A stretch of 64,000 nt of DNA. Origin: Vitrella brassicaformis CCMP3155. Its lineage: Eukaryota; Protista; Chromerida. Numbering within the stretch: the first letter of the stretch is position 1; each line of letters opens with the position of its first letter. Both the position numbers and the translations under genes were made by a program. The notes under the pieces are model-generated. The model was not told the DNA's origin, searched no databases, and worked only from the letters and a program-made list of their open reading frames with translations. This document shows positions 2,809-51,804 of the stretch, piece after piece. The stretch covers positions 248,001 to 312,000 of the forward strand of contig CDMY01000456.1 of assembly GCA_001179505.1 (NCBI GenBank). The letters run 5' to 3'.

Positions 2809-5800
2809 TCACTTCTTGCTGCCAGCAGGTAGAAAAAGAGGCGGCCGATAGCCAGAGTCGTCACCCTCACTACTCCCTTGATGCGCCTTGCTCGTCCCGT
2901 TGGCGGCATACCCACCACCACCACCCCCAGTGCCCATCCCTAGCCCCCCGTCACCATTGCCGGGCTGCTGTGGATTCGCAGGACCACTACTGTTGGAGAG
3001 GAAGGCCGAGGTGGTCGCCACGGTGCCGTTGTCGCTGCCCTCGGCCAGCGTCGAGGTCTCGACGGTGGCGTCGCCCCCCGCCCCATTGATGGTGTCGTCT
3101 TCCCGCCTCCTGGACGACACTTGCATTCTCCACATCTGAGCGTACTCTCCGCCTGCGGCCAGCAGCTCGTCATGGGTGCCGTGCTCCACCAGCTGACCCT
3201 CGTGCAGCACCATGATCTGACAGACAGACAGACAGACAGACAGGTGAGAGAGAGAGTATGGAGGAGGGCATGGCATTGGGACGGCATGGACAGACAGCTT
3301 TTCGTTCTGCCGATGACCGTGGGTGCCTACCTGGTCAGCGTGTCGGATTGTGCTGAGTCGATGTGCAATGGTGATGCAGGTGCGATTGCGACGAAGTCGC
3401 AACAGGGCCTCCTGCACACACACACAAATACCCATTCATTCACACACTCCTTCAGCACAAGCCGCATCATAGCCAGCTGGTGTGGCTTGGTCGATCTCCT
3501 CACCCACCTGTATCCCCGCCTCCGTCTTCGTATCCAGTGCCGAGGTGGCCTCGTCCAGCAGGACGATGGGGGGGTTCTTGAGAAGGCATCTGGCGATGGC
3601 TACTCGCTGCTTCTCTCCCCCCGACAGCTTGAGTCCTCTCTCGCCCACGGTGGTCTCCCACTTGTCAGGCAGGGACTCGATGAAGCCCCTCAGCTGCGCC
3701 ATCTCGGCCACCCGCTCGCACTCCTCCATTGTGGCGTCCAGCTTACCGTACTTGATGTTGTGCAGCAGGGTGTCGTTGAACATGACCGTGTCCTGAGGCA
3801 CCACACCTACCGCCTGACGCACTGACCTGCATCACATCACATGCGCACGCACACGGCAAACATGGTGAGGTGTGTGGATGTATGGGTTGAGTGCACTGCA
3901 CCGGCAGCTTGCCTTTGCTGCACGGATGAGATGTCGGCCCCGTTGAGGAGGATCTGCCCCTGCTGTGGGTCGTAGAAGCGGAAGAGCAGCCGGCTTATGG
4001 TGGTCTTCCCCGCACCCGTATGCCCCACAATGGCACAGGTCGACCCAGCAGGGACCACAAAAGACACGCCACGCAGACCCCTGAACAAACAAACCGAACA
4101 TTTGAAGAACAGCAGACAGACAAATGCTGCACTCACTGTTCATTGAATGCCTCTTCCCTTTCTCATCTCACCTTTGCGCAGGTTGGTTGGGGTACTTGAA
4201 GTGCACATCCCTGAACTCCACCACGATGCCGCCACACGTCTGGTCACCGGGGTTGCCGGCCGTGACGCCGTTGATCGACCCACTGTCCATCGGCAGGGCT
4301 ATCTCGCCCGTGACGTGGTGCGGCAGGGGCAGCGGGGGGGCCCCAGGCATGTCGACCAAATCAGGCTGCCAAGGCAGGCAGGAAGGATTCCATGGGGAAA
4401 CGCTTATATGGAGAGGGGGCGGCGAGGGAGCCGCCCGTTTCTGTCTCCCTGTGTGGCCACATACCTGTTCTGCGAGCAGCTGTGACAAGTTTCGGATGTC
4501 GATGAAGGCCTTGATAATCACGTTCCACACCTGACAACCATACACACACACACACACACATGGCATGTGATGAGGTGAGGCGGTATTGCGGCGGACGGAC
4601 GGACTGACCGAGCCAAGGAAGTTGAGGGGCACAAAGACGTTGATGATGTAGACGTTGACCGACACGAATGACCCGATCGACATATCTCCTCGCCGGATCT
4701 CCATCCCGCAGATGATCAGCCCCACTGGCCATCACACCAACACACACACAGAAACACAGAAGTCGTCAAATGTCTGACGGCGGCGGGCGGTGGGTTCTTA
4801 CGTATGAGGGTGCTCTGGACGATGACCTGCTGCAGGACATTGAGCAGGTTCAGCGACACCTGGGTCGCCACACCAAACCGCTGACAAACAAGACACAACA
4901 GAACACAACACAGTACACACACCCCCACACAAACGCCTCTCCGTGTGTCGTATTGCCCCCTGTGTGATGTGTCGATGTTCACTCACCTGGTAGTCCCTGA
5001 CGGCCTCGCAGAATCTATCGAGCTCGAAGGGCTCGTTCGTGAAGTACTTGACCGTCTCGAAGTTGATGAGGGAGTCGGTGGCTATGTCGTGGAAACGGTT
5101 GTCCTTCTTGTTGGCCTCCGTCCTAAATTTCCTCCGCCAAAGCGTCACCTTGACCGTCAAGATGCCGTAGATCAGCAACGCACCCGCCAAAAGGGCCGCC
5201 AGCTCCCACCTTTACACACAGGATGGTGGGGGGAAGTGTGTGGTGACGTGTGTGTCGGCGTGTGGATACTTTTGGAAATGCAGAAGGAAGACCACACAGA
5301 CGGCGAAGCACTCGGCGACCGAGGGGATGAGATACAGCACACCCCACGTCATCAAACTGTTGGCCGCGTCGCAGCCACGATCCCTGACACAACACACAAT
5401 ACACACACACACACACAGACAGGCCGTGAGGTGGGTGAATGATACAATGGCCCGTCCGTCCGTCGTCTGTGCTGCCCTTCCCTCCTTGCTTGTATACATG
5501 GAACGTATGACGTTGCCCATGCGTTTCTTGAGGTGCCACTGGAGGGAGAGGTTGTGTAGGTGCTGGAAGGTGTGCTGGGCGATCTCGATGTACGCCGCCT
5601 GCTGCACCTTGATGTAGAGGAGGCTCTGACACTCCTTGAGGGCCTTGCCGCTGAAGGTTAGGAAGCCGAACAGCACCACATACGTGATCAGCCCGCCCAC
5701 CCGGCCATCGGTCAGCGCGTTGACAGCGAAGCCGAGGAAGGCCGGCGCACAGACGTTGCATGTCTTGCTGCCGACGACGCACAGCCAGGTGGACAGACAC

Positions 5801-6602
5801 CGGATGCGGTTCCACATGGTGCTGCCCTTGCCGTCCACGCTACTCCTCGGCCAAAAGTAAGGCCGCAGCACCTTGAGCAGCGACCACACAGACAGCTCGC
5901 TGCTGTACTGCTCCTCCTCAGGCGTGCTCGGCGCCTGCCCATCCTCACTGTTGACCGTCAGCAGAGCGATCCGGTTGGCGCGTGCCTTCTGCTCGTTGCT
6001 CACGACGGCCTCCAGCCACCAAGTCAACAGCCAGTCGGCGAAAGCAAACACCAGGTTGACCAGCACGATCAGCCCCACATGGTGTGTGCCGCTGAACCAT
6101 GGATAAGCGAGCACCTTGACGAGTGCATAGAAGGCCAGGACGCCGAGGAATCGGGCCAGCCAGAGGAGGGGAGTGGTCTTCCACCTCTCCTCGTTGCCTT
6201 TGGTGCCAAGGTAGACCACCGCCACGCTCAGCGACCGGACTAGGGCAACGATGATAATGTCGAAGGCCGACGAGCGGAAGTGGTAGCGCGCGACGTCGTT
6301 ACGACTGGCCTCTAGGAAGGAGAAGCCATAGCAGCCAAGCCACAAAACGAACAGCAGGAGCCAGTCGGCGATAGCAAGGACCGTCCCCAGCCGGTAGAAC
6401 CGTGCTTTCTTCTTCCCCTGTGAGTCACATAGGCATGCACACAGACACCGACAGACAGTGCATGAGTGCGTGGCCGGCCGTCCTCTCCCCCCGACACATG
6501 CTATGCCCTCTTGTGTGTCTATGTGTTTGTTTGCCGCTGACTGACCAGTGTCGCCAGTAGCTCATCCTCCTGGATGGTGCTGAGGTCCGACATGTCAGTC
6601 AT
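2809..6602 (-). CDS. ABCB half-transporter, HMT1/ABCB6/ATM-like, with extra N-terminal TM region
   Basis: Walker A GHTGAGKT, signature [13 protein letters not shown], Walker [20 protein letters not shown], and TMD motifs [12 protein letters not shown] and VFVPLNFLG. All 10+ junctions are phase-consistent, one of them GC-AG. See the upstream extension at 6595-7031. Confidence 0.92.
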
Positions 6603-36482: not shown

Positions 36483-39400
36483 ATGAGTGATGCTTCCAAG
36501 CTCTCGGCAGCCCTTAACGCCACAGTGGCCGTCATGTCCGACGTCGGTGGGTGCACTCGAGAGGCCGCCAGCGACATCATCGGCAGCGACGCCAGTTGGC
36601 AGAGTTCGTCGATTCATTGGTTGGACGAAATGTGGCTGGTGCTATGTGCCCTGCTCGTCCTCATAATGCAGCCCGCATTTGCAATGTACGTATGTAAGGG
36701 GCTCAGAAAGGACGTTTGTGTGTGTTCGGACGTCGATGTGTGTGTGTGTGTTCCACGTGAGGGGCTGGGCGTTTGGGGTGTTGTGATGCTGCTGCTGCTG
36801 CAGGTTTGAGGCAGGCTGTGTGTCCGACAAGAACGGTGCCTCTGCACACACACATGACATACAATACACGTGTGCGTCTCCGTCCGTCTATCTCTTGACC
36901 AACCAGGTGCCTCCATCATGATAAAGAATGCAGTGGACATACTCGTCTGCTCGTTCGCCTACGCACTTGTCGGTAAGTGCCGGAGAGGAGAAGGGAGAGA
37001 TGAGGCGGGCGGCCTTGATTGTGCGCGGGGCGGGTGGGTATGTTCAGGTTTTCAGCTGTCCTACGCAACGGCCGACCCCTTTGTACCTCCGGATGACATG
37101 GCCAGATTCTTCTTCAATCTGGCATTCGCCAGCACCGGTATGTATGAAGACACACAAAGCGGGGTGTGCGCAGATGACTGTCTGTTTCTCCATCACCGTT
37201 TGTGACAGCCGCCACGATCCTGAGTGGTGCGTTGGCGGAGAGGCTTCGTTTGAACGCCTACATCATTCTTACTCTTGCTGTCGGCAGCGTCATCTACCCC
37301 ATCGTGACGGTACGTATGTGGCAGTCACTTCCGATTCATTTCCGCCATGCGTGTGGTGTGGTGTCTCAGTGGTGGGTGTGGGCCGATGACGGTGAGCAAT
37401 CGGACGGACAAGAGGGCACATTAGCCTGGCATGTATGAATGCATTGGTGCGTGGCTGCACTGGCTGGCTGCAGGTCTCCTGCAGAAACAAGGGTACATAG
37501 ACTTCGCTGGCGGCAGTGTGGTGCACGTCTTGGGGGGCGTTGGCGCCCTCACTGCCGCAGCGATGCTCGGCCCACGTGTGGGGCGATACCCGGAGTACTC
37601 TCCGTGGGACATGCCCGTGCTGCGTCGACTGCTCGGTCGAAGCCTGGACCCCGACCAATACATGCTTCCGCCGGGATTGCCGGCCATTGAAGACGCACCA
37701 CACCCCTTCCGCATCGTCTCAGGCACCCTCTTTCTATGGTCTGTCTGTTATATCTTGGATACTGATAACGCCTGGACATTGTGTTTGTGTTTGTGTGTTA
37801 CGTACAGGGGTGCGCGGTACGGATTCAATTGTGGCTCGACCATGGGTGTGACTGCCGGCGGTGCCTACGTGGCTGCCCGTGTGGCGGTGATCACAACGAT
37901 GGGTGCCGTGGGCGGCGGGCTGGCCATCGTTGCCATCAGCATGATGTCCAGGCGATGGGTGCCTCTGCGTCTCTGCACGGGCATACTCGCGGGGCTCGTG
38001 TCCATCACGGCTGGTTAGTCTGAGAGACATGAAGCGGAGCTCTTGATCGTGTTTATCGTGTGTCGGTAGGTGCGCCTCACCTCGGAATGTACGAGGCAAT
38101 GGCTGTGGGTGCTCTTGGGGCGTTGTTGGCCCGGCTGTCGACGGCAATCCTCAAGTGGTGCCAGATCGACGATGTCGTCGGTGCCTTCGGCACGCACGGC
38201 GTGCCCGGTGCGTGGGGTGTGTTGGCCGTGGCGCTGTTCGCCAAGAGTGCCAGCTGCGGAGACTATACCACGGTTGGGCTTTTCTATGCCGCCACCAAGG
38301 AGCAAGTCAACGAGGTCACAGACAGACAGACAGACAGAGAGAGACCGCGGACCTGGATGGATGCCCTCCTGTGTGTGTGTGTGATTTCGATGTCTAGGCT
38401 TTTGTGCAGGTCGGTGTGCAGCTTGGCGGCCTCCTGCTGATCATTGCCTTCACGTCTGCATCAGTCGCCATCGTCTGCTTTGTACGTTACGTGATCATAC
38501 AGACACGAACGTCACATAGCGGATCGCATGTCCATCTCTGTTGTGTGCAGGTGCTGAATCAGACGCCGATGAAGCTGCGTGTGTCGTTCGGAGAGGAACT
38601 GACGGGCCTGGACTGGATGGAGCAGTCCATAAAGAACATGCATCAGGCCAGAATGGAGGTCGTCGAGTCCCTCGTGCACTCCGTCGCGGGACTTAACGCA
38701 GGTGTTATTGAGCATGACACCATCAATTGTTATCTTATAACTAGCATTTGTCTGTGTGTCCGGGCGGTCAGAATGGGACCTATCGTGAGAAAGATAGCTG
38801 CGCTGATGTGTCTCATGCATTGATATACATCCCATCTGGTGCTTGCCAATGTCAGGTGGTTGTCGGCTGAAGCGAAGCGCTTGAAGCTCCACAAGTCGAC
38901 TTCACGAACAATGGAGGTGCGTGCAGACAGCCTGATAAGAATCCTTTGCCTGTCGCTTCTTGCCATCGATCAGACGACTTTGAATCACTTCGTCAAGGCC
39001 AGCCGAGCCCTCAGAGATGCTTCGGCGCAGAGACGGTCCAGCACGGGCTCAGAGGTGGATGTTGAGCTGCCTGTCTTCATGCCCCTGGGCACTCTGGTGG
39101 TGCTCGTGCATCGCGCGGAGATGAAGAAAGGCGTAAGAGGCAGCTGGGGAGACACCACTGCAGTGAAACACGAAGCCACACGTCCCTCTCTCTGCACGTG
39201 TGTCTGCTACTTACTGCAGGTGAGCACACCGGATGACCGAACCTTCTTTGTCGAAGTCAAGCTTGTCCGGTCAGCACTGTGTAGTCAGCCGCACCTCTGA
39301 CATATGTGTGTGTCATGTCATGCGTGCCACTAGTGGCGACCCCGACAGCGCCGATGGCACAGCCAAACTGCAGCCCCACCCCGGATTCCGCAGAGCACGA

Positions 39401-40829
39401 GACACAGCCATCGTGGACGAAGCTGCGACCCAATCCGCATACGTGTGGGAAGAGGTGGGCCAGGACCCATTAATGGATCATGACAGCCTTCTGGTCTGTG
39501 ACAGTTTGTCTGTCTGTCTGTCTGTCTAGCCGTTGGTGTTTGCGAATGTGGGCAATGAGGTGGTCAACGATTTACTCATACAGGTGGGCCGCTATCGACA
39601 CACGCCACATATACGTGTGTGTGTGTGTGTGTGTGTGTGATAACTTGACTAGTTCAATGTGTACGATGCCCGCTCGCTTCGGGACATGCGCGGCGACTGC
39701 TTCGGTTCGTCACTAGCGACCAAGGCACTCGCCAATGACGTCAGCGCCGCCGCCGCGGGGTTCAAGAAGAAACACTCGATAATGACAGGCAGCGTACGGA
39801 TGGGCATACCCGATGCACGCCCTTGCGGACGGACAATGCACCCTTCAGGCGTTTTACCCAGCCTGCCCGTCCTCTTGGGAGCAGGACCTGGCCGGAGACG
39901 ACTTCCAAAAGGACATGATGGAAGGGGTCAGCACAGCACCGTGAGACACCAACAGACACTCTCATCGTGTACTCATGGAAGGAAGTATGGATACATACGT
40001 CTTTGTGTTGTCAGGGCGTCAAGACCAAAGAGCTGTGTCGGGCCATCAGGCTGGAGGCGCGACGGAGTAGCCTCGCCAGGCGAATGTGCGTAAGGACGGT
40101 GCACCGCACTGCACTCACAGAAACCTGCACAGACCTGTTCGCCCACCCAGGTCATTTATGCGCAAGGACGACGAGAAGAAAATCATTATTACCGGCAAGC
40201 TGTACTTCTCCATCGAGTTCAGGACGAGCGATTTTGACAAGGTCGGTCACACGGACACTCACCGTGTGTCGCTCACAACGTCCCGTTATCCTGTGCATCC
40301 ACCCCTCCATCCGTCCGTGCAGTCTCTGTCGAAAGCTATATCATCGCTGGTGGCGGTCGACAAGCAGCTGGAGGCCAGAAAGCGCAATTCGATACCAAGT
40401 CAGCCAACAAGAGTTCATCTATGTGTGTATGTGTGTGGCATGGACCACCTACGCAGCTTCTGAGCTCGACCTGCCCATAAGTCCGACTGCGGGCAAGGGC
40501 TCTCTGTCCACCTTCAGCCGACGCACACACAACTTGATAAAAAAGGGAATCGCCAGGATTGGTGAGAGCAAGACACAACGCCTCAGCTGTCTCACCTCAC
40601 GTCGTGTGTGCGTGTGTGTGCAGCCAAGTCGATGGCTCGTTCGCCCAAAAGCGGCGATGCGCTCCAGCCAGGTCTGGATATGTTCGCTCACCGGCGGAGG
40701 GCCTCCGTCGGCCGCTGCTCCGTCATGAGCAACGACGAGCGGGTCTCACTCGAGGTCGACGCACCGCCCCTCCAAGCCGCACCGTCTGCAGCACACCTCC
40801 TCGCCGCGCCCAAAATCATCAGCTCTTAA
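36483..40829 (+). CDS. AMT: Ammonium transporter (Amt) with long C-terminal extension containing a C2-like domain
   Basis: FEAG..KN..IMIKN, FNLAFAST..ILSGALAER, DFAGGSVVH, YGFNCGS, DDVVGAFGTHGVPG, LRVSFGEELTGLD, followed by a phase-consistent exon chain to TAA at 40827-40829. Confidence 0.93.
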
Positions 40830-46112: not shown

Positions 46113-46408
46113 CAGAACATAGCCGGGTAGGTACGCTACGAACACGCGAGCGGCCTGTTGCATCCATGACAAGGCCATCGAATGGACGCGATGAGCTGCA
46201 TTCGGTGGAGGGCAGCTGGGCAGGGCGGATCAAATGGGACAAAAGAATGTGGTTTGCTGCCGGGATGGGGTTGTCGGTAGAGGCATATATGCCGGCGGTG
46301 ATGGGCACGTCTGCCGACCCAGACGAACAGTGCAAAGGTACGGCAACGAACAGAGCAGGTCCTCACCAGTGAGAACACGCAGTTTGCCATTCTGTTGGTC
46401 TGTCAGAA

Positions 46409-47018
46409 ATGGCGGCTGTGTTTCACCAGCTCACTTCCCAGTCGTACGACGTCTGCATCGACCGCAAGATGGAGGTGCCCGACACCAGCCATCACGGGCC
46501 ACAAACCTATCTAATCGCTTTCATCCCCGCGGCCGCGGCGTTCGCCGATCATTTGACTCGCCGGCTGTTCCTTTATGATGGCTTCGAGAGCGACTGGATC
46601 CCCAACCGATGGCTTTACACACGTGGAGCTCACGAGAGGCGCCGGGCGTCTTGGTGCGACCCTTATGGAGCCTTACTGCATGTGGATGGCGCAGGGAGTT
46701 TCCATGAGCGCCGAGGCCACACCATAGCGTCAGTCCGAAAGTATTCTTTCATGGCGACTTCGGAGGAGGCTGTGCGTCACATTGAGACGGCTCGGTGCAC
46801 CGAGGGCACGCCTGATGAGGCCAAGGCTGACTGCGTTAAGACAGAGGCTCACTTTCAGCAAGAAGGCTTCGCCGGCAACCGCCTGGCCTCCTTGCAGTCA
46901 ATTGCCCACGAACACCCGCTACTTGCGCAGATAGACAACACGGGCTACACCTATGTGAATCTGGTGAGCAATCGGACAGACACACACGGACACAAACAGA
47001 CACCCATCCCGCCAAACA

Positions 47019-47058
<40 letters not shown>

Positions 47059-47929
47059 TTTGGCTGATTGTATGCATCGGCCTTGTTGTGTGTGTTTGTT
47101 TGTTTGTCTGTGTCTATTCCGTTCTCAGAAATTGGAATCGGGGGATCAAGACACAGGTGGAGAAGGGAAGAAGAAGAAGGTTCTGGACAGCACACATGTG
47201 GAAGCGGCCCGCATTCTCGTTGAGGAGCTGAACCGGGTTGCGGTCGGTTTCGGCTCGACGGGACTTCAGCCGCCAAGAGCCACCTGCCGCCATTGGGTAT
47301 TGCTGTCGCGCTTCGTGATCAACAAAGACGGCACAACCCCCCTCACTCTGCTGGCCAGCCACCTACTTCATCACTCATCCGTCTTGTCGGGCGTGCACGA
47401 CATTGCCGACCTTCACGCCCACTTAGCCAGCCACCTACACTGGCGTGTGAGTGCCCATGCCGTCGTGCACGAGCGCCTGGAGTCCAGCTACGGGCCGGCT
47501 CTCCCGATCTTCAATCCCCAGCTGAAGACGCACGAGACAGAAGAGGTCATGGAGAATCTCTACGAGCCGTGGGGGGAACTCCTACTTGCCGCCACAGGGG
47601 TGGAGCAGTCCATCAAACCCCACCATACGCGTGGCTACTGTGTGAGAGCGTCAGGGAAGGACACACACGGCAACCGCCTCGTCACTCTGCCAATGACCCC
47701 CCTCTACGGCGCATCCCCTCTGTACCGGCTCTATGTCCTCGACATCACCAACACGCAGATTTGGCTGGCAGCGCGCATCGCGGGGAAGGCGTGGCAGCGG
47801 CGCAAGAAAGAGCACTTCAAGACCTTCGCAAAGGGGTGGCGGCGCATCGAGGGAGTGTCGAAGCTGTGTGTAGTGCTGAGAGAGCGATGTGTCTGGATCA
47901 GGTCATACTTTAGGCGAGCAGGGCCTTAG
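46409..47929 (+). CDS. Hypothetical protein (~450 aa), one in-frame stop-free intron at 46964-47128
   Basis: The 506-codon ORF contains a 165-nt GT-AG segment made of (CA)n(GA)n..(GT)n repeats. No family recognised. Confidence 0.75.
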
Positions 47930-48320: not shown

Positions 48321-48703
48321 CTCACTGAGTGCGATGTGCATGTGCAACAGACAGTGTGTTGGTGGTGCCTGTGCGTCCTTAGCCCATCGTCTGGACGGGG
48401 GCTTAGCCCATGTGCGGCGCGGCATGGTGTGTAGAAGACATTCATGATTGCGTCACTCGACTTGTCTCATTCGCTAATCAAGCGCAAGCAAAAAGAAAAA
48501 CGAGGCAAGCTTCGACGACCCGACACCGACCGACAAACTTCCTTACTCGTACGGCGCATCTCAGCCAGTCACGTCAACTGACTCTCGTATCAATCGGTCC
48601 TGCCCACCCTTCTCTCTCAGTTTTGATTTCGCATGCTTTGTGTGTCTCTCACTCGACTAAGTTTGTAGGTCTCTCTCTCTCTCTCTCTGTCTCTGGTGGG
48701 TAG

Positions 48704-51700
48704 CTAGGGCTCTTCTTTGATAGGTGTGCCCCGCGAGAACTCCGACCGGCGGCCTTTGAGGCTCATCTGGCTGCCACGCCGGCCGGGATGGCTGCCATAC
48801 CACACACCAAAGATCAAACAACACATCATGGCACAGACGACAATCTCGGCTTTTTCTTCGAGGTCGCGTGCTTGCGTACCTCTCCACTTCGTCGACGTAT
48901 TGGAAATCGATTGCGGCGAGGGGCACCCAGGAGGGCTCCCATTCAACGGGGTCGGCGCCCTGGGGGATGGCCCACTTGAGCAGCGCGTCACCCGTGACGT
49001 ACCTGAGATCTACCACTTCGGCACGGCACCAACCGTACTCATCGTACCACACCTGATGTACCAAGAAAGGAAACCCGATGGTGTCTCGTGTCTCGTTCCG
49101 ACGAGGGAGGCATCGACCTGTATCTTTCGTCCGGGTGCGATCTCGGCCCACTCTCCCTGGGTGACGGCAAGGGAGCTGCGGAGCTTGGCTGCCACCTGCT
49201 CGATGGTCTCGACCTGCTGGTCGGCGATCTCGGTCTCGATGGGAGGCGGCACCTGTCATTCAGGCAGGGATGACACGCGTTCGGGCAGAGGCGAAGGTGA
49301 GTCTCTGCGTGTGCAAGTGCCTTGATGATGGTGCTGCCGGTCATTCGGATGAGGTGAAAGATGAGACACACGACCGACAGCGTGGCATACGCCGCCGCAA
49401 ACCTCCACTTGTAAAACTCCGTCAGCCCCTGTATGAAAGGACACGCCCACACACAGAAATAGGCATATCAACGAAGCCCCCCCCTCTCTCCTATGTGTGT
49501 TGATATACTTCAGGGTATGGGTACTGGAGGTCGGTCCATCCAAAGATGCCTGTTTGTGACTGGTGGATCATGCCAAGTCCGGCCAGGAGGGTGCCCACGA
49601 GGCCCCAGGCGGCGGCGAGCAGCAACTTGCGGTCGATGAGGTACACCATGATGGCCGTCCATATCACCGACGAGAAGATCGAACCGAGACCGAAACCGCC
49701 GAGACCGAACCGAGAGGGGTCACTCTCCTGCACACACACAAAGAACGAAAGAAGTTACGGATTGCGGTGTGGCTCCCTCTCCCTTGTAGGTCGTGCGTGT
49801 GCTGTGTGGACAGGTACAGAGAAGCTGCCGCCGGTGCCTGCGGCGAATTTCCATCCCCAGTCGGCCAGCACGGGCATCAGACCCACAGCAAAGGCCGGGA
49901 AGTGACGCACGGCCAAACCCTGCACACACACAAGCACGCCACAAATACCATACAGCAACTCACGTGTCTCCCTCCCCATCACCCCGCACACCCACCCCCG
50001 CGGCGTCCATGAAGATCATGAGTCCCACGAAGATGATCATGGGCGCGACGGCCCCCTCGGGCACCAGCTTGAGGATGGCGCCAAACACGCCGAAGAGCGA
50101 CAGGGCGCTGAATACCACCGCCACCATGCCGGCGTAGTAGATGGACGCACCTGTGTCGTATGTATGCGTCGGCAGTGAGTATATCATTTTACATTAATTC
50201 TTCAGTGCAAAGTGCAAGTCTGTCTGTCTCCTGTTGGTTCATCCATCCCTCACGCACCCATGCGTTTGTACGCCGGCTGACCGATGTACACACCGACCGC
50301 CAAAGGGTTGCCCAAGAAAACTGCACACCACCCACGGAGACAATCCAGATGATCAGCCAGCGAGCGGTCGACTGGGCACATCAAATGCCTGTGATGAGGT
50401 TGAGGGCCCCGTCGAAGAGGAGGCAGGTGCGCATGGGGTAGCGGTCTCCGGTGCGGCTGGCGGAGTAGACGTTGAGGATGGTGCCCATCGAGTTGGTGAC
50501 TGCACGCACGTGCCACAGACAGATGGATGAGCGCAGGCATAGAGGTTCGGTCGGTCCTTGTTCCCTTCCCACTCACAGGCGATAGGAATGATGGTGCCGA
50601 GATACCTGACGGATGGATGGATAGAGACACGTGACACAATGAATGCATTCAGGCACGTGCAAGATAGCTGGGTGGCTATCCGCCGGTTTGGCTCACTCAC
50701 TTCTGCAGCTCGACGAATCCTGACATGTCCAGGCCAACACCCTCAGCAGACCAGCCTACAAGAATCAACCACACACATGCAGGGGATTGGTCGCCCATTT
50801 CCTGCCACACCACACCCACCGATTCCGAGTCCCCAGAAGGTTATTTTGGTGGCGGCGCCCGAGAGGTCCTTCATGGAGACGAACCCCTGTATGGCGCCGC
50901 CCACGGTGCCGAATACCAGCACACACACCGCCACGGGGATGTACCAGAACTCGACCTCCGACAAGTAAGTGATGCCACACAGAGACACAGAGACATCCAG
51001 CCATTGCAGGCCGGAAACCCGTGCAGAGGGGGAGGGGAGAATGGAGAGAGAGGAAAGACATGCCTTCACTCGTCCAGTCCCTGTCTCACCCGATGAGGGC
51101 CAGGACGAGTGGGAGGAAGCCAATGAGCGGCGCCATGAAGATCTTGCCGAACCACTCCACGCCCAGCCACGTCAGACCGATGGCCGCAAGGGGCGTCATC
51201 AGACCAGCGGGGGGCACCACCTTCTCCACGTAGTTGCCCACCAGCGCCACACACATGGATATCACGCCTCCTAGAATGTTCCTGCACAAAACACAGGCCA
51301 GGGGCACAAAGAGGCAGCAAGGGAGACAGAATGCACGAGCTCCTAGTAGGGGCACTGACTCACGCACCCGAGCACTGCGATTTTCCATGCCTCCTCGACC
51401 ACTTTGTTGACGCTGGCGTACTTGACGGTGCTCTCTCCCTTGCCGGCAATGAAAGCCATGCCCTCCCCCATGATGGGCGCCATGATGCTGAAGATGAAGG
51501 CGAACCCCGCCGGAGACGAAATGCCGAACGGCATTGCACAGACGTCTCTGCGCCCCTCCCGCTTCATGAGCCAAGCGCCCAGCCACGCGTAGAACATGTT
51601 GCTGAAGAGAAGGCCGACCCCTGCAGCTGGCAGCACTCGGCCGAGGATGATTTTGTCGCAGAGCGGCTCCAGTGTGTCGTTTGCCTGCAGGACGTTGCGC

Positions 51701-51804
51701 ATGGCAACCATGAGAGCGAGGGCGGTGCATGTGTTGTCCATGAGCAGCTGGAAGAAGGCGTTGAGCTCGGCAGCCCAGTTGGTCTTGTCGTCTTTGCCGC
51801 TCAT
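48704..51804 (-). CDS. NCS2/AzgA-related xanthine-uracil-type permease with C-terminal Tudor/SH3-like domain
   Basis: ELNAFFQLLMDN, GRVLPAAGVGLLFSNMFYAWL..EGRRDVCAMPFGI, GNPLAVGVYIGQPAYKRMGA, IIFVGLMI, VYLIDRK. Tail WAEIAPGRKIQVWYDEYGWCRAEVVDLRYVTGDALLKW..WEPSWV. Includes two GC-AG introns and one GT-AC intron. Confidence 0.88.

What the first reader, a model, noticed from the sequence alone, without database searches (positions are those of the whole stretch)
48704..49460. Nucleobase-type permease fused to a Tudor/Agenet/SH3-like domain
Seen: after the last TM, a 68-nt GC-AG intron (49320-49253) links in frame to a helical linker and WAEIAPGRKIQVWYDEYGWCRAEVVDLRYVTGDALLKWAIPQGADPVEWEPSWVPLAAIDF, then an RRGS/RRSE basic tail. 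Known: G-x-x-V-x-V-W..W..A.V with several aromatics is typical of Royal-family beta-barrels that read methyl-Lys/Arg. I know no NCS2-type permease with this architecture. Inference: a transporter with a cytosolic interaction or sensor module. It is the second nitrogen-scavenging transporter fusion in this window.
Basis: partly seen in the sequence, partly recalled or inferred. Interest (0 to 1): 0.75.

Follow-up and report, generated by a model that had tools for sequence, protein, structure and literature searches.

The report
Vitrella permease with orphan C-terminal domain
A gene of the alga Vitrella brassicaformis really does join a nucleobase-transporter-shaped membrane permease to an extra 130-residue cytosolic tail with a small tryptophan-rich beta domain, but that domain has no detectable relatives anywhere and its Tudor/SH3-like shape is only a lead, not a result.

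Summary
The minus-strand gene (ATG 51804, TAG 48706-48704) has 14 exons. The 68-nt GC-AG intron 49320-49253 joins the last transmembrane exon in frame to three tail exons. The public model CEM14646.1 / A0A0G4FM70 (653 aa, Vitrella brassicaformis) has this junction. So does a 220-aa ORF on a 923-nt JGI contig, which is shorter than the 964-nt genomic span and must therefore be spliced.

The core matches no Pfam, NCBIfam or PDB sequence. It is 28-30% identical to bacterial 490-550-aa proteins that sources name inconsistently. Its AlphaFold model has the 7+7 UraA fold, with UapA as best match (Z 27.6). "NCS2-type" is therefore supported by fold, not by family membership.

All 38 bacterial relatives end 10-30 residues after the last helix, so the tail is found only in Vitrella. 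Its core exon found nothing real among 1.84 billion representative proteins and no second copy in its own genome. AlphaFold could not fold it. ESM Atlas neighbours are Tudor-clan barrels, which counts as a lead only. No aromatic cage or methyl-mark reading is shown.

Verdict: a real, expressed fusion with a lineage-specific orphan domain, most likely a cytosolic regulatory or docking module. Interest is moderate.

The parts
48704..51804 (-). Whole gene: 14 exons and 13 introns. It corresponds to CEM14646.1 / UniProt A0A0G4FM70 (653 aa, Vitrella brassicaformis CCMP3155).
   Evidence: Exact mapping of P0011 onto the window. Splice sites of every junction.
49321..51804 (-). Exons 1-11: permease core (P0011 residues 1-522) with a 7+7 UraA/NCS2-type fold. 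The TM3 and TM10 beta-strands are present in the model at 93-95 and 323-325.
   Evidence: AF2 with a 39-sequence alignment gave core pLDDT mostly 85-95. Foldseek hits SVCT1 and UapA at E 7e-6 to 5e-5. VIA-align gives UapA Z 27.6. The core is 28-30% identical to bacterial proteins of 490-550 aa.
49253..49320 (-). 68-nt GC-AG intron that joins the last TM exon to the tail.
   Evidence: Donor GCACTT, acceptor GACAG, in frame. The junction K522|V523 is present in P0008 and P0011.
49118..49252 (-). Tail exon 1: acidic linker with a predicted helix (P0011 539-550) and the first strand(s) of the beta domain (WAEIA, start of RKIQ).
49053..49117 (-). 65-nt GT-AG intron inside the beta domain.
48880..49052 (-). 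Tail exon 2: core of the Trp/Tyr-rich beta domain (VWYDEYGW...IDFQYVDEVE). This is an orphan sequence.
   Evidence: phmmer against 1.84 billion representatives found only itself plus two repeat-protein artefacts. It is the only copy in its own genome. No Pfam, NCBIfam or PHROG hit.
48792..48879 (-). 88-nt GT-AG intron.
48704..48791 (-). Tail exon 3: basic end (pI 11.4) with RRGS (629-632) and RRS (639-641), followed by the TAG stop.
50321..50388 (-). Second GC-AG intron of the gene, also 68 nt, inside the permease core.
   Evidence: Donor GCATTT, acceptor GTGCAG.
50258..50281 (-). 24 nt treated as intron in the public model. An in-frame downstream donor (GTGCGT at 50257) would keep them and add GQPAYKRM, which matches the bacterial consensus.
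   Evidence: Alignment gap in P0011 opposite the conserved bacterial G-P-K columns. Junction check.

Best explanation
This is one expressed gene. It encodes a 14-helix elevator-type permease of the UraA/NCS2 structural superfamily, from a Pfam-less family otherwise seen here only in bacteria.

Three extra 3' exons extend it in Vitrella by about 130 cytosolic residues. These comprise an acidic helical linker, a roughly 70-residue Trp/Tyr-rich beta domain and a basic end with two RRxS sites.

The tail most likely acts as a cytosolic regulatory or docking module. Probably folded as a small SH3/Tudor-like barrel, the beta domain would bind either a partner protein or the transporter's own cytosolic face. 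Phosphorylation of the basic end would modulate that contact.

Shown here: the gene structure, the splicing, the fold of the core, the absence of the tail in all bacterial relatives, and the absence of sequence relatives of the tail.

Inferred: the cytosolic side (by homology with UapA/UraA, whose C-termini are cytosolic, which is established knowledge), the barrel fold, and the whole regulatory mechanism.
For: Splicing and fusion.

Core fold: AF2 pLDDT 75 overall with the core at 85-95. Foldseek top hits are SVCT1, UapA, prestin, SLC26Dg, AZG1 and UraA. VIA-align gives UapA Z 27.6, with BicA, SLC26A2, UraA and SVCT1 at about Z 24.

Tail absent from relatives: in alignment A1 the bacterial proteins stop 10-30 residues after the last helix. 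The 77 complete ORFs among the 80 bacterial loci reach at most 531 aa.

Orphan tail.

Beta content: both AF2 runs place strands at 557-561, 564-570 and 575-581.

Barrel lead: ESM Atlas neighbours by features are Tudor-knot, Tudor_3, Agenet, PTM_DIR17_Tudor and 53BP1_Tudor (0.83-0.86). By structure they are PHF19 Tudor_2, coilin Tudor and Myosin_N clusters (TM 0.58-0.67).

Composition and RRxS sites.
Against: The second half of the domain is below pLDDT 50 in both AF2 runs. No Tudor or SH3 HMM or PDB sequence matches it. The Atlas scores are in the range the tool calls leads only.

With no homologues there is no conservation evidence that the tail is under selection or folded. The Vitrella core is very divergent: it differs at 26 of 74 columns that are at least 90% conserved in the bacterial proteins, including Tyr in place of the near-invariant Glu of the NVESA motif. 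It also sits on a very long tree branch. Transport activity itself is therefore not assured.
Confidence: 0.6

Rival explanations
1. The tail is a bona fide Royal-family (Tudor/Agenet-like) reader. An aromatic cage binds methyl-lysine or methyl-arginine on a cytosolic partner and so couples the transporter to protein-methylation signalling.
For: Tudor-clan families dominate the named ESM Atlas neighbours. The domain has 6 Trp and 4 Tyr in 70 residues. The pattern G-x-K-x-x-V-W...G-W-x-x-A-x-V resembles Tudor strands 1-2; this comparison comes from my own memory and is not a test.
Against: No Tudor-clan HMM or PDB Tudor sequence hits the tail, even at E 10. There is no confident model in which cage positions could be checked. 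SH3-like barrels are the commonest small beta fold and most do not read methyl marks. Earlier follow-ups in this genome left two of five such Tudor-like calls unsupported or unproven, which bears only on how often such calls hold up.
Confidence: 0.12
2. The tail is not a folded barrel. It is a fast-evolving, largely flexible C-terminal regulatory tail with a short beta-hairpin. It would work through linear motifs, such as RRxS phosphorylation and sorting or turnover signals, as in the C-tails of fungal nucleobase permeases and plant AMT1.
For: AF2 gives only three medium-confidence strands and then pLDDT 32-48. There are no homologues at all. The end is basic, with two RRxS sites.
Against: A strongly hydrophobic, aromatic, alternating pattern over about 60 residues is not typical of disordered tails. 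The ESM model of this stretch superposes on small barrels at TM about 0.65. Low single-sequence AF2 confidence is expected for any orphan domain.
Confidence: 0.25
3. The fusion is an annotation or assembly artefact, and the tail exons belong to another transcript or to the 3' UTR.
For: The donor is non-canonical (GCACTT).
Against: One unbroken ORF crosses four introns on a contig shorter than the genomic span. The tail exons have no ATG of their own in frame. All three tail junctions keep the frame with canonical AG acceptors. A second GC-AG intron lies inside the conserved core, where the splice is required to keep the conserved frame.
Confidence: 0.03

Closest known systems
UapA / UraA / SVCT1 (NCS2 = NAT family, SLC23)
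   Same: A 14-helix 7+7 inverted-repeat fold with core and gate domains and short beta-strands in TM3 and TM10. UapA is the best structural match (Z 27.6, rmsd 4.1, 383 residues aligned). Foldseek hits SVCT1 and UapA at E 7e-6 to 5e-5.
   Different: About 10-16% identity. No PF00860 hit. No NAT signature motif. The substrate is unknown. None of these proteins carries a folded C-terminal beta domain (established knowledge).
Unnamed bacterial permease family (JGI: 'AGZA family xanthine/uracil permease-like MFS transporter'; NCBI: hypothetical, MFS, SulP or NCS2 family permease)
   Same: 28-30% identity over the whole core, with shared motifs such as AMP(Y/F)G, (E)SAxxxGD and YIG(H/Q)P.(W/Y)K.MGA.
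   Different: The bacterial proteins are 490-550 aa and end just after the last helix. In the proteobacterial subfamily I sampled (80 loci, at least 71% identical to one another in the matched N-terminal part) they usually follow an isochorismatase-family hydrolase gene. Vitrella has 13 introns, a 130-residue tail, Tyr in place of the near-invariant Glu and a very long branch.
SLC26/SulP transporters with a C-terminal STAS domain
   Same: The same transporter superfold (Z 22-25) carrying a cytosolic C-terminal globular domain that regulates or docks. This is the nearest architectural precedent.
   Different: The Vitrella tail gives no STAS or any other Pfam hit. It is much smaller and predicted to be beta-rich.
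Tudor / Agenet / SH3-like small beta-barrels (Pfam Tudor clan)
   Same: Similar size of about 60-70 residues, beta-rich and aromatic-rich. They are the nearest named neighbours of the ESM model and embedding.
   Different: No sequence-profile match. The fold is not confirmed by AlphaFold. No cage has been identified, and the context is a cytosolic membrane protein rather than chromatin or RNP.
Ammonium transporter-C2 fusion in the same window (36483-40829)
   Different: A different transporter family and a different appended domain. I did not re-examine it.

Membership tests
NCS2/NAT (Pfam PF00860 Xan_ur_permease) | Significant match to the family HMM | tested here: not met
   No PF00860 hit for the exons, for full-length P0011, or for a bacterial relative. 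A profile of 14 family members finds no PDB sequence.
NCS2/NAT (Pfam PF00860 Xan_ur_permease) | 7+7 inverted-repeat UraA fold with TM3/TM10 beta-strands | tested here: met
   The AF2 model has strands at 93-95 and 323-325. UapA gives Z 27.6; UraA and SVCT1 give Z about 24. Foldseek E values are 7e-6 to 7e-4. SLC26 and SLC4 share this fold, so it does not by itself assign the family.
NCS2/NAT (Pfam PF00860 Xan_ur_permease) | NAT signature motif [Q/E/P]-N-x-G-x-x-x-x-T-[R/K/G] in TM10 (motif recalled from the literature) | tested here: not met
   A regular-expression search of P0011 finds none.
NCS2/NAT (Pfam PF00860 Xan_ur_permease) | Transport of nucleobases or related compounds | not testable with these tools
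   Only context hints exist. In the proteobacterial subfamily I sampled, relatives sit next to an isochorismatase-family hydrolase, and about ten also sit next to an AtzE-family amidase.
AzgA-like (AGZA, as JGI names the bacterial relatives) | Closer to AzgA/AZG proteins than to other 7+7 transporters | tested here: inconclusive
   AZG1 and AZG2 score Z 22.6-23.3, below UapA (27.6) and level with SLC26. There is no NCBIfam hit. The names given by sources disagree.
Tudor / Royal family | Match to a Tudor-clan profile | tested here: not met
   No such Pfam hit at E up to 10. phmmer against PDB at E up to 10 gives only SurA at E about 1.
Tudor / Royal family | Five-stranded SH3-like barrel | tested here: inconclusive
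   AF2 gives three strands and then pLDDT below 50. The ESM Atlas model superposes on Tudor-containing clusters at TM 0.58-0.67, which is a lead only.
Tudor / Royal family | Aromatic cage and binding of methyl-Lys/Arg | not testable with these tools
   The domain is aromatic-rich (6 W, 4 Y in 70 residues), but there is no reliable model in which to place the side chains.
SLC26/SulP | C-terminal STAS domain | tested here: not met
   No STAS hit in P0011 or P0008.

The most novel reading that the evidence does not exclude
The orphan Trp-rich domain is a new, lineage-born peptide- or methyl-mark-binding barrel. It would tether or gate a nitrogen-compound permease in response to cytosolic signalling. 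If so, chromerid algae build sensor-transporters by bolting small reader domains onto nutrient permeases, with the neighbouring Amt-C2 gene as a second example.
Probability: 0.1. Interest if true: 0.75.

Novelty: new variant of a known kind. Interest (0 to 1): 0.4.

Why it matters
If the tail is a functional domain, this is a rare case of a 7+7 (NCS2/SLC26-fold) permease outside SLC26 that carries its own cytosolic globular module. It would also show that such a module can arise within one lineage from sequence with no detectable ancestry.

Two wider points follow. A large bacterial permease family, with at least 553 confirmed matches in the scan of species-representative genomes, has no Pfam or NCBIfam model and carries contradictory names. 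It is also a worked example of GC-AG introns that gene finders could miss. The practical value is limited until a substrate and a binding partner are known.

Tried and rejected
Family and sequence searches that found nothing:
- Pfam and NCBIfam on every exon found nothing.
- phmmer of exon 1, P0011, P0008 and a bacterial relative against PDB found nothing useful.
- A 14-sequence profile against PDB found nothing.
- PHROGs gave nothing significant.

Weak tail hits treated as chance:
- SurA parvulin at E about 1. That alignment starts inside TM14.
- Mrr_N at E 0.011-0.064, 16 bits against a cut-off of 29.5.
- A YukD-like domain at E 0.05-0.23.

The two non-self hits of the big search are artefacts. 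They are a 5720-aa ENA repeat protein and a Toxoplasma repeat protein. In both, a 13-26-residue motif is summed over dozens of repeats.

Searches that added nothing:
- The second word search, using the alignment, returned the same proteins.
- A Tudor HMM search of the window's own genome gave only one unrelated Tudor gene, so no local profile could be built.
- Literature searches for the accessions, for NCS2 plus Tudor, and for Vitrella plus nucleobase transporter found nothing relevant.

A tree of the core cannot name a donor, because Vitrella sits alone on a branch of more than 5 changes per site. I therefore make no horizontal-transfer claim.

I considered a canonical-donor alternative for exon 2/3 that would restore 11 residues aligned in bacteria. 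I rejected it because no in-frame AG acceptor exists there.

Full report
**What is there**

The window is eukaryotic, with 58% G+C and many 60-150-nt introns. Its genome has 72.7 Mb in 1064 contigs. The exact protein is deposited as CEM14646.1 / UniProt A0A0G4FM70, "unnamed protein product" of Vitrella brassicaformis CCMP3155. This agrees with earlier notes of this scan. It is not human DNA.

The gene lies on the minus strand, from ATG 51804 to TAG 48706-48704. I mapped the 653-aa public model (P0011) back onto the window and solved every junction. This gives 14 exons and 13 introns. Eleven introns are GT-AG. Two are GC-AG, both 68 nt long: 50388-50321 and 49320-49253.

**Check of the observation**

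The exon ends ...ATCAAG at 49321, the donor is GCACTT and the acceptor ...GACAG, and the next exon starts at 49252 in frame (VPPPIETE...). The basic RRGS/RRS end needs a third (48879-48792).

Independent support comes from P0008. This is a 220-aa ORF from a JGI/IMG record on a 923-nt contig. It runs from the middle of exon 10 through exon 11 and all three tail exons to the same stop, and is identical to the window throughout. On the genome that stretch is 964 nt long and has four introns. The 923-nt contig must therefore be spliced, that is, derived from RNA.

If the GC-AG intron were retained, the frame would add 93 low-complexity residues and stop.

**How I searched the spliced model**

I searched my own spliced model only exon by exon, by reference. 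I did not search or fold a joined product of my own. That includes the variant with the alternative exon-7 donor. All full-length work used the database's own records, P0011 and P0008. In scripts, only junction windows of at most 20 codons were spliced, to verify frames.

**The permease**

No exon, nor the full-length protein, nor a bacterial relative matches any Pfam or NCBIfam model or any PDB sequence. A 14-sequence profile also finds nothing in PDB.

Word searches found only prokaryote-type proteins of 490-550 aa. They are 24-30% identical over the core. Their sources call them variously "AGZA family xanthine/uracil permease-like MFS transporter", "MFS transporter", "SulP family inorganic anion transporter" or "hypothetical".

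With a 39-sequence alignment, AlphaFold gave a confident core, pLDDT mostly 85-95. The model shows the two short strands in TM3 and TM10 that mark the UraA fold. Foldseek's top PDB hits are SVCT1, prestin, UapA, SLC26Dg, AZG1 and UraA. VIA-align puts UapA first (Z 27.6, rmsd 4.1, 383 residues). BicA, SLC26A2, UraA and SVCT1 follow at about Z 24, and AZG1/2 at about Z 23.

The ESM Atlas gives the same picture. Its nearest clusters are unnamed or labelled "NCS2 family permease", have no Pfam family, and reach TM 0.83. Xan_ur_permease and BenE clusters reach TM 0.6.

The NAT signature motif is absent. The core is thus a member of the 7+7 superfamily, nearest to NCS2 by shape. It is not a demonstrated member of NCS2/NAT or AzgA, and its substrate is unknown.

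Vitrella's copy is very divergent. It differs at 26 of 74 columns that are at least 90% conserved in the bacterial proteins. One of these is Tyr289, where 37 of 38 bacterial proteins have Glu, in NVESA. It sits alone on a very long branch. I found no other eukaryotic member, but the searches were not exhaustive for that question. I make no transfer claim.

**The tail**

In the alignment, all bacterial relatives end 10-30 residues after the last helix. The 77 complete ORFs among the 80 bacterial loci reach at most 531 aa. Vitrella adds three parts, numbered on P0011 (composition):

| Residues | Part | Features |
|---|---|---|
| 523-554 | Acidic linker | pI 4.3, with a predicted helix at 539-550 |
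| 555-624 | Acidic, aromatic-rich stretch | 6 Trp, 4 Tyr, pI 4.1 |
| 625-653 | Basic end | pI 11.4, with RRGS and RRS |

The core exon of the domain (57 aa) was scored by HMMER against 1.84 billion representative proteins. The only true hit is the protein itself. The two other hits are giant repeat proteins in which a 13-26-residue motif is counted many times. There is no second copy in the Vitrella genome in six frames at E up to 10. No Pfam, NCBIfam, PHROG or PDB sequence match is significant.

AlphaFold was run on P0008 alone and on the full protein. Both runs agree on three strands: 557-561, 564-570 and 575-581, at pLDDT about 60-68. Both leave the rest below 50.

The ESM Atlas holds its own model of this protein. 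For residues 552-626 its structural neighbours are clusters that contain Tudor-type barrels, such as PHF19 Tudor_2, coilin Tudor and PDS5 with a PTM/DIR17 Tudor, or the SH3-like myosin N-terminal domain. TM is 0.58-0.67 over 61-66 residues. The named neighbours by language-model features are Tudor-knot, MBT, Tudor_3, Agenet and 53BP1 Tudor, at 0.83-0.86. The tool states that such values are leads and that the two lists count as one source.

I therefore put a small SH3/Tudor-like barrel at roughly 55-60%, and a methyl-mark reader at roughly 10-12%.

**How it most likely works**

In UapA, UraA and SLC26 proteins the C-terminus after TM14 is cytosolic (established knowledge). By homology of the core, the tail is cytosolic too.

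SLC26 transporters share this fold and carry a C-terminal STAS domain that regulates and docks. That is the closest architectural precedent, but the Vitrella tail is not STAS.

My best reading, at confidence 0.6, is a lineage-specific cytosolic regulatory or docking module. The beta domain would contact a partner or the transporter's own cytosolic face. The RRxS sites would be switches for a basophilic kinase. Apart from the cytosolic side, which rests on homology as above, this whole mechanism is my own inference.

**Context hints for the substrate (weak)**

The 80 proteobacterial loci I fetched form one subfamily. They are at least 71% identical to one another in the matched N-terminal part. 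In this subfamily an isochorismatase-family hydrolase gene ends at the permease start. It was seen in 74 of the 80 loci through the antisense frame, and was identified in Acidiphilium rubrum. About ten loci have a full-length AtzE-family amidase downstream. Acidiphilium also has a DUF1989 gene.

That fits uptake of a small nitrogen-rich amide or ring compound. At 29% identity, and with the changed Glu, it says little about Vitrella.

**Novelty and verdict**

The gene is already in public databases, but uncharacterised. I found no paper on it or on such an architecture.

It is a new variant of a known kind: a 7+7 permease with an appended orphan domain. The fusion is real. The "Tudor" label is unproven. 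The domain is confined to one species and offers no functional handle yet. Interest: 0.4.

Noticed in passing
window 50258-50281 (-): The public model CEM14646.1 splices at donor GTCAGC (50281). An in-frame donor GTGCGT at 50257 would keep 24 nt encoding GQPAYKRM. That fills an 8-residue gap opposite the bacterial consensus YIG(H/Q)P.(W/Y)K.MGA, including three near-invariant columns. This is either a mis-annotated donor or alternative splicing.
   Followed up: partly
window 50321-50388 and 49253-49320 (-): Two of the 13 introns are GC-AG, and both are exactly 68 nt. This rate is far above the 1-2% non-canonical introns quoted for animals, fungi and plants in PMC7789003. I did not measure the genome-wide rate in Vitrella.
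   Followed up: no
P0011 residue 289 (window about 50470, exon 6): Vitrella has Tyr where 37 of 38 bacterial relatives have Glu in the NVESA motif. Overall it differs at 26 of 74 highly conserved columns, which may mean a changed substrate or coupling.
   Followed up: partly
L028:2315-3013 (+), 3001-4581 (+), 4960-6321 (+); about 74 of loci L003-L082: The sampled proteobacterial permease genes are preceded by an isochorismatase-family hydrolase gene that overlaps their start. About ten loci are followed by an AtzE-family amidase. The permease family itself has no Pfam or NCBIfam model, and public records name it in contradictory ways.
   Followed up: partly
window 46373-47926 (+): An unbroken 518-codon open frame between this gene and the repeat-protein gene. 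It has no Pfam match and was not examined further.
   Followed up: partly
window 48670-48688: A (GA)n microsatellite starts 16 nt after the stop codon, in the presumed 3' UTR.
   Followed up: no
P0009 (ENA, 5720 aa) and P0010 (Toxoplasma gondii KAF4646355.1, 2073 aa): These giant repeat proteins reached E 3e-13 and 6e-6 in the 1.84-billion search only because a short motif (VTGSSLQLNWALPTGANP, or GDAIMRWGLPSNA) recurs dozens of times. Short queries are prone to this trap.
   Followed up: yes
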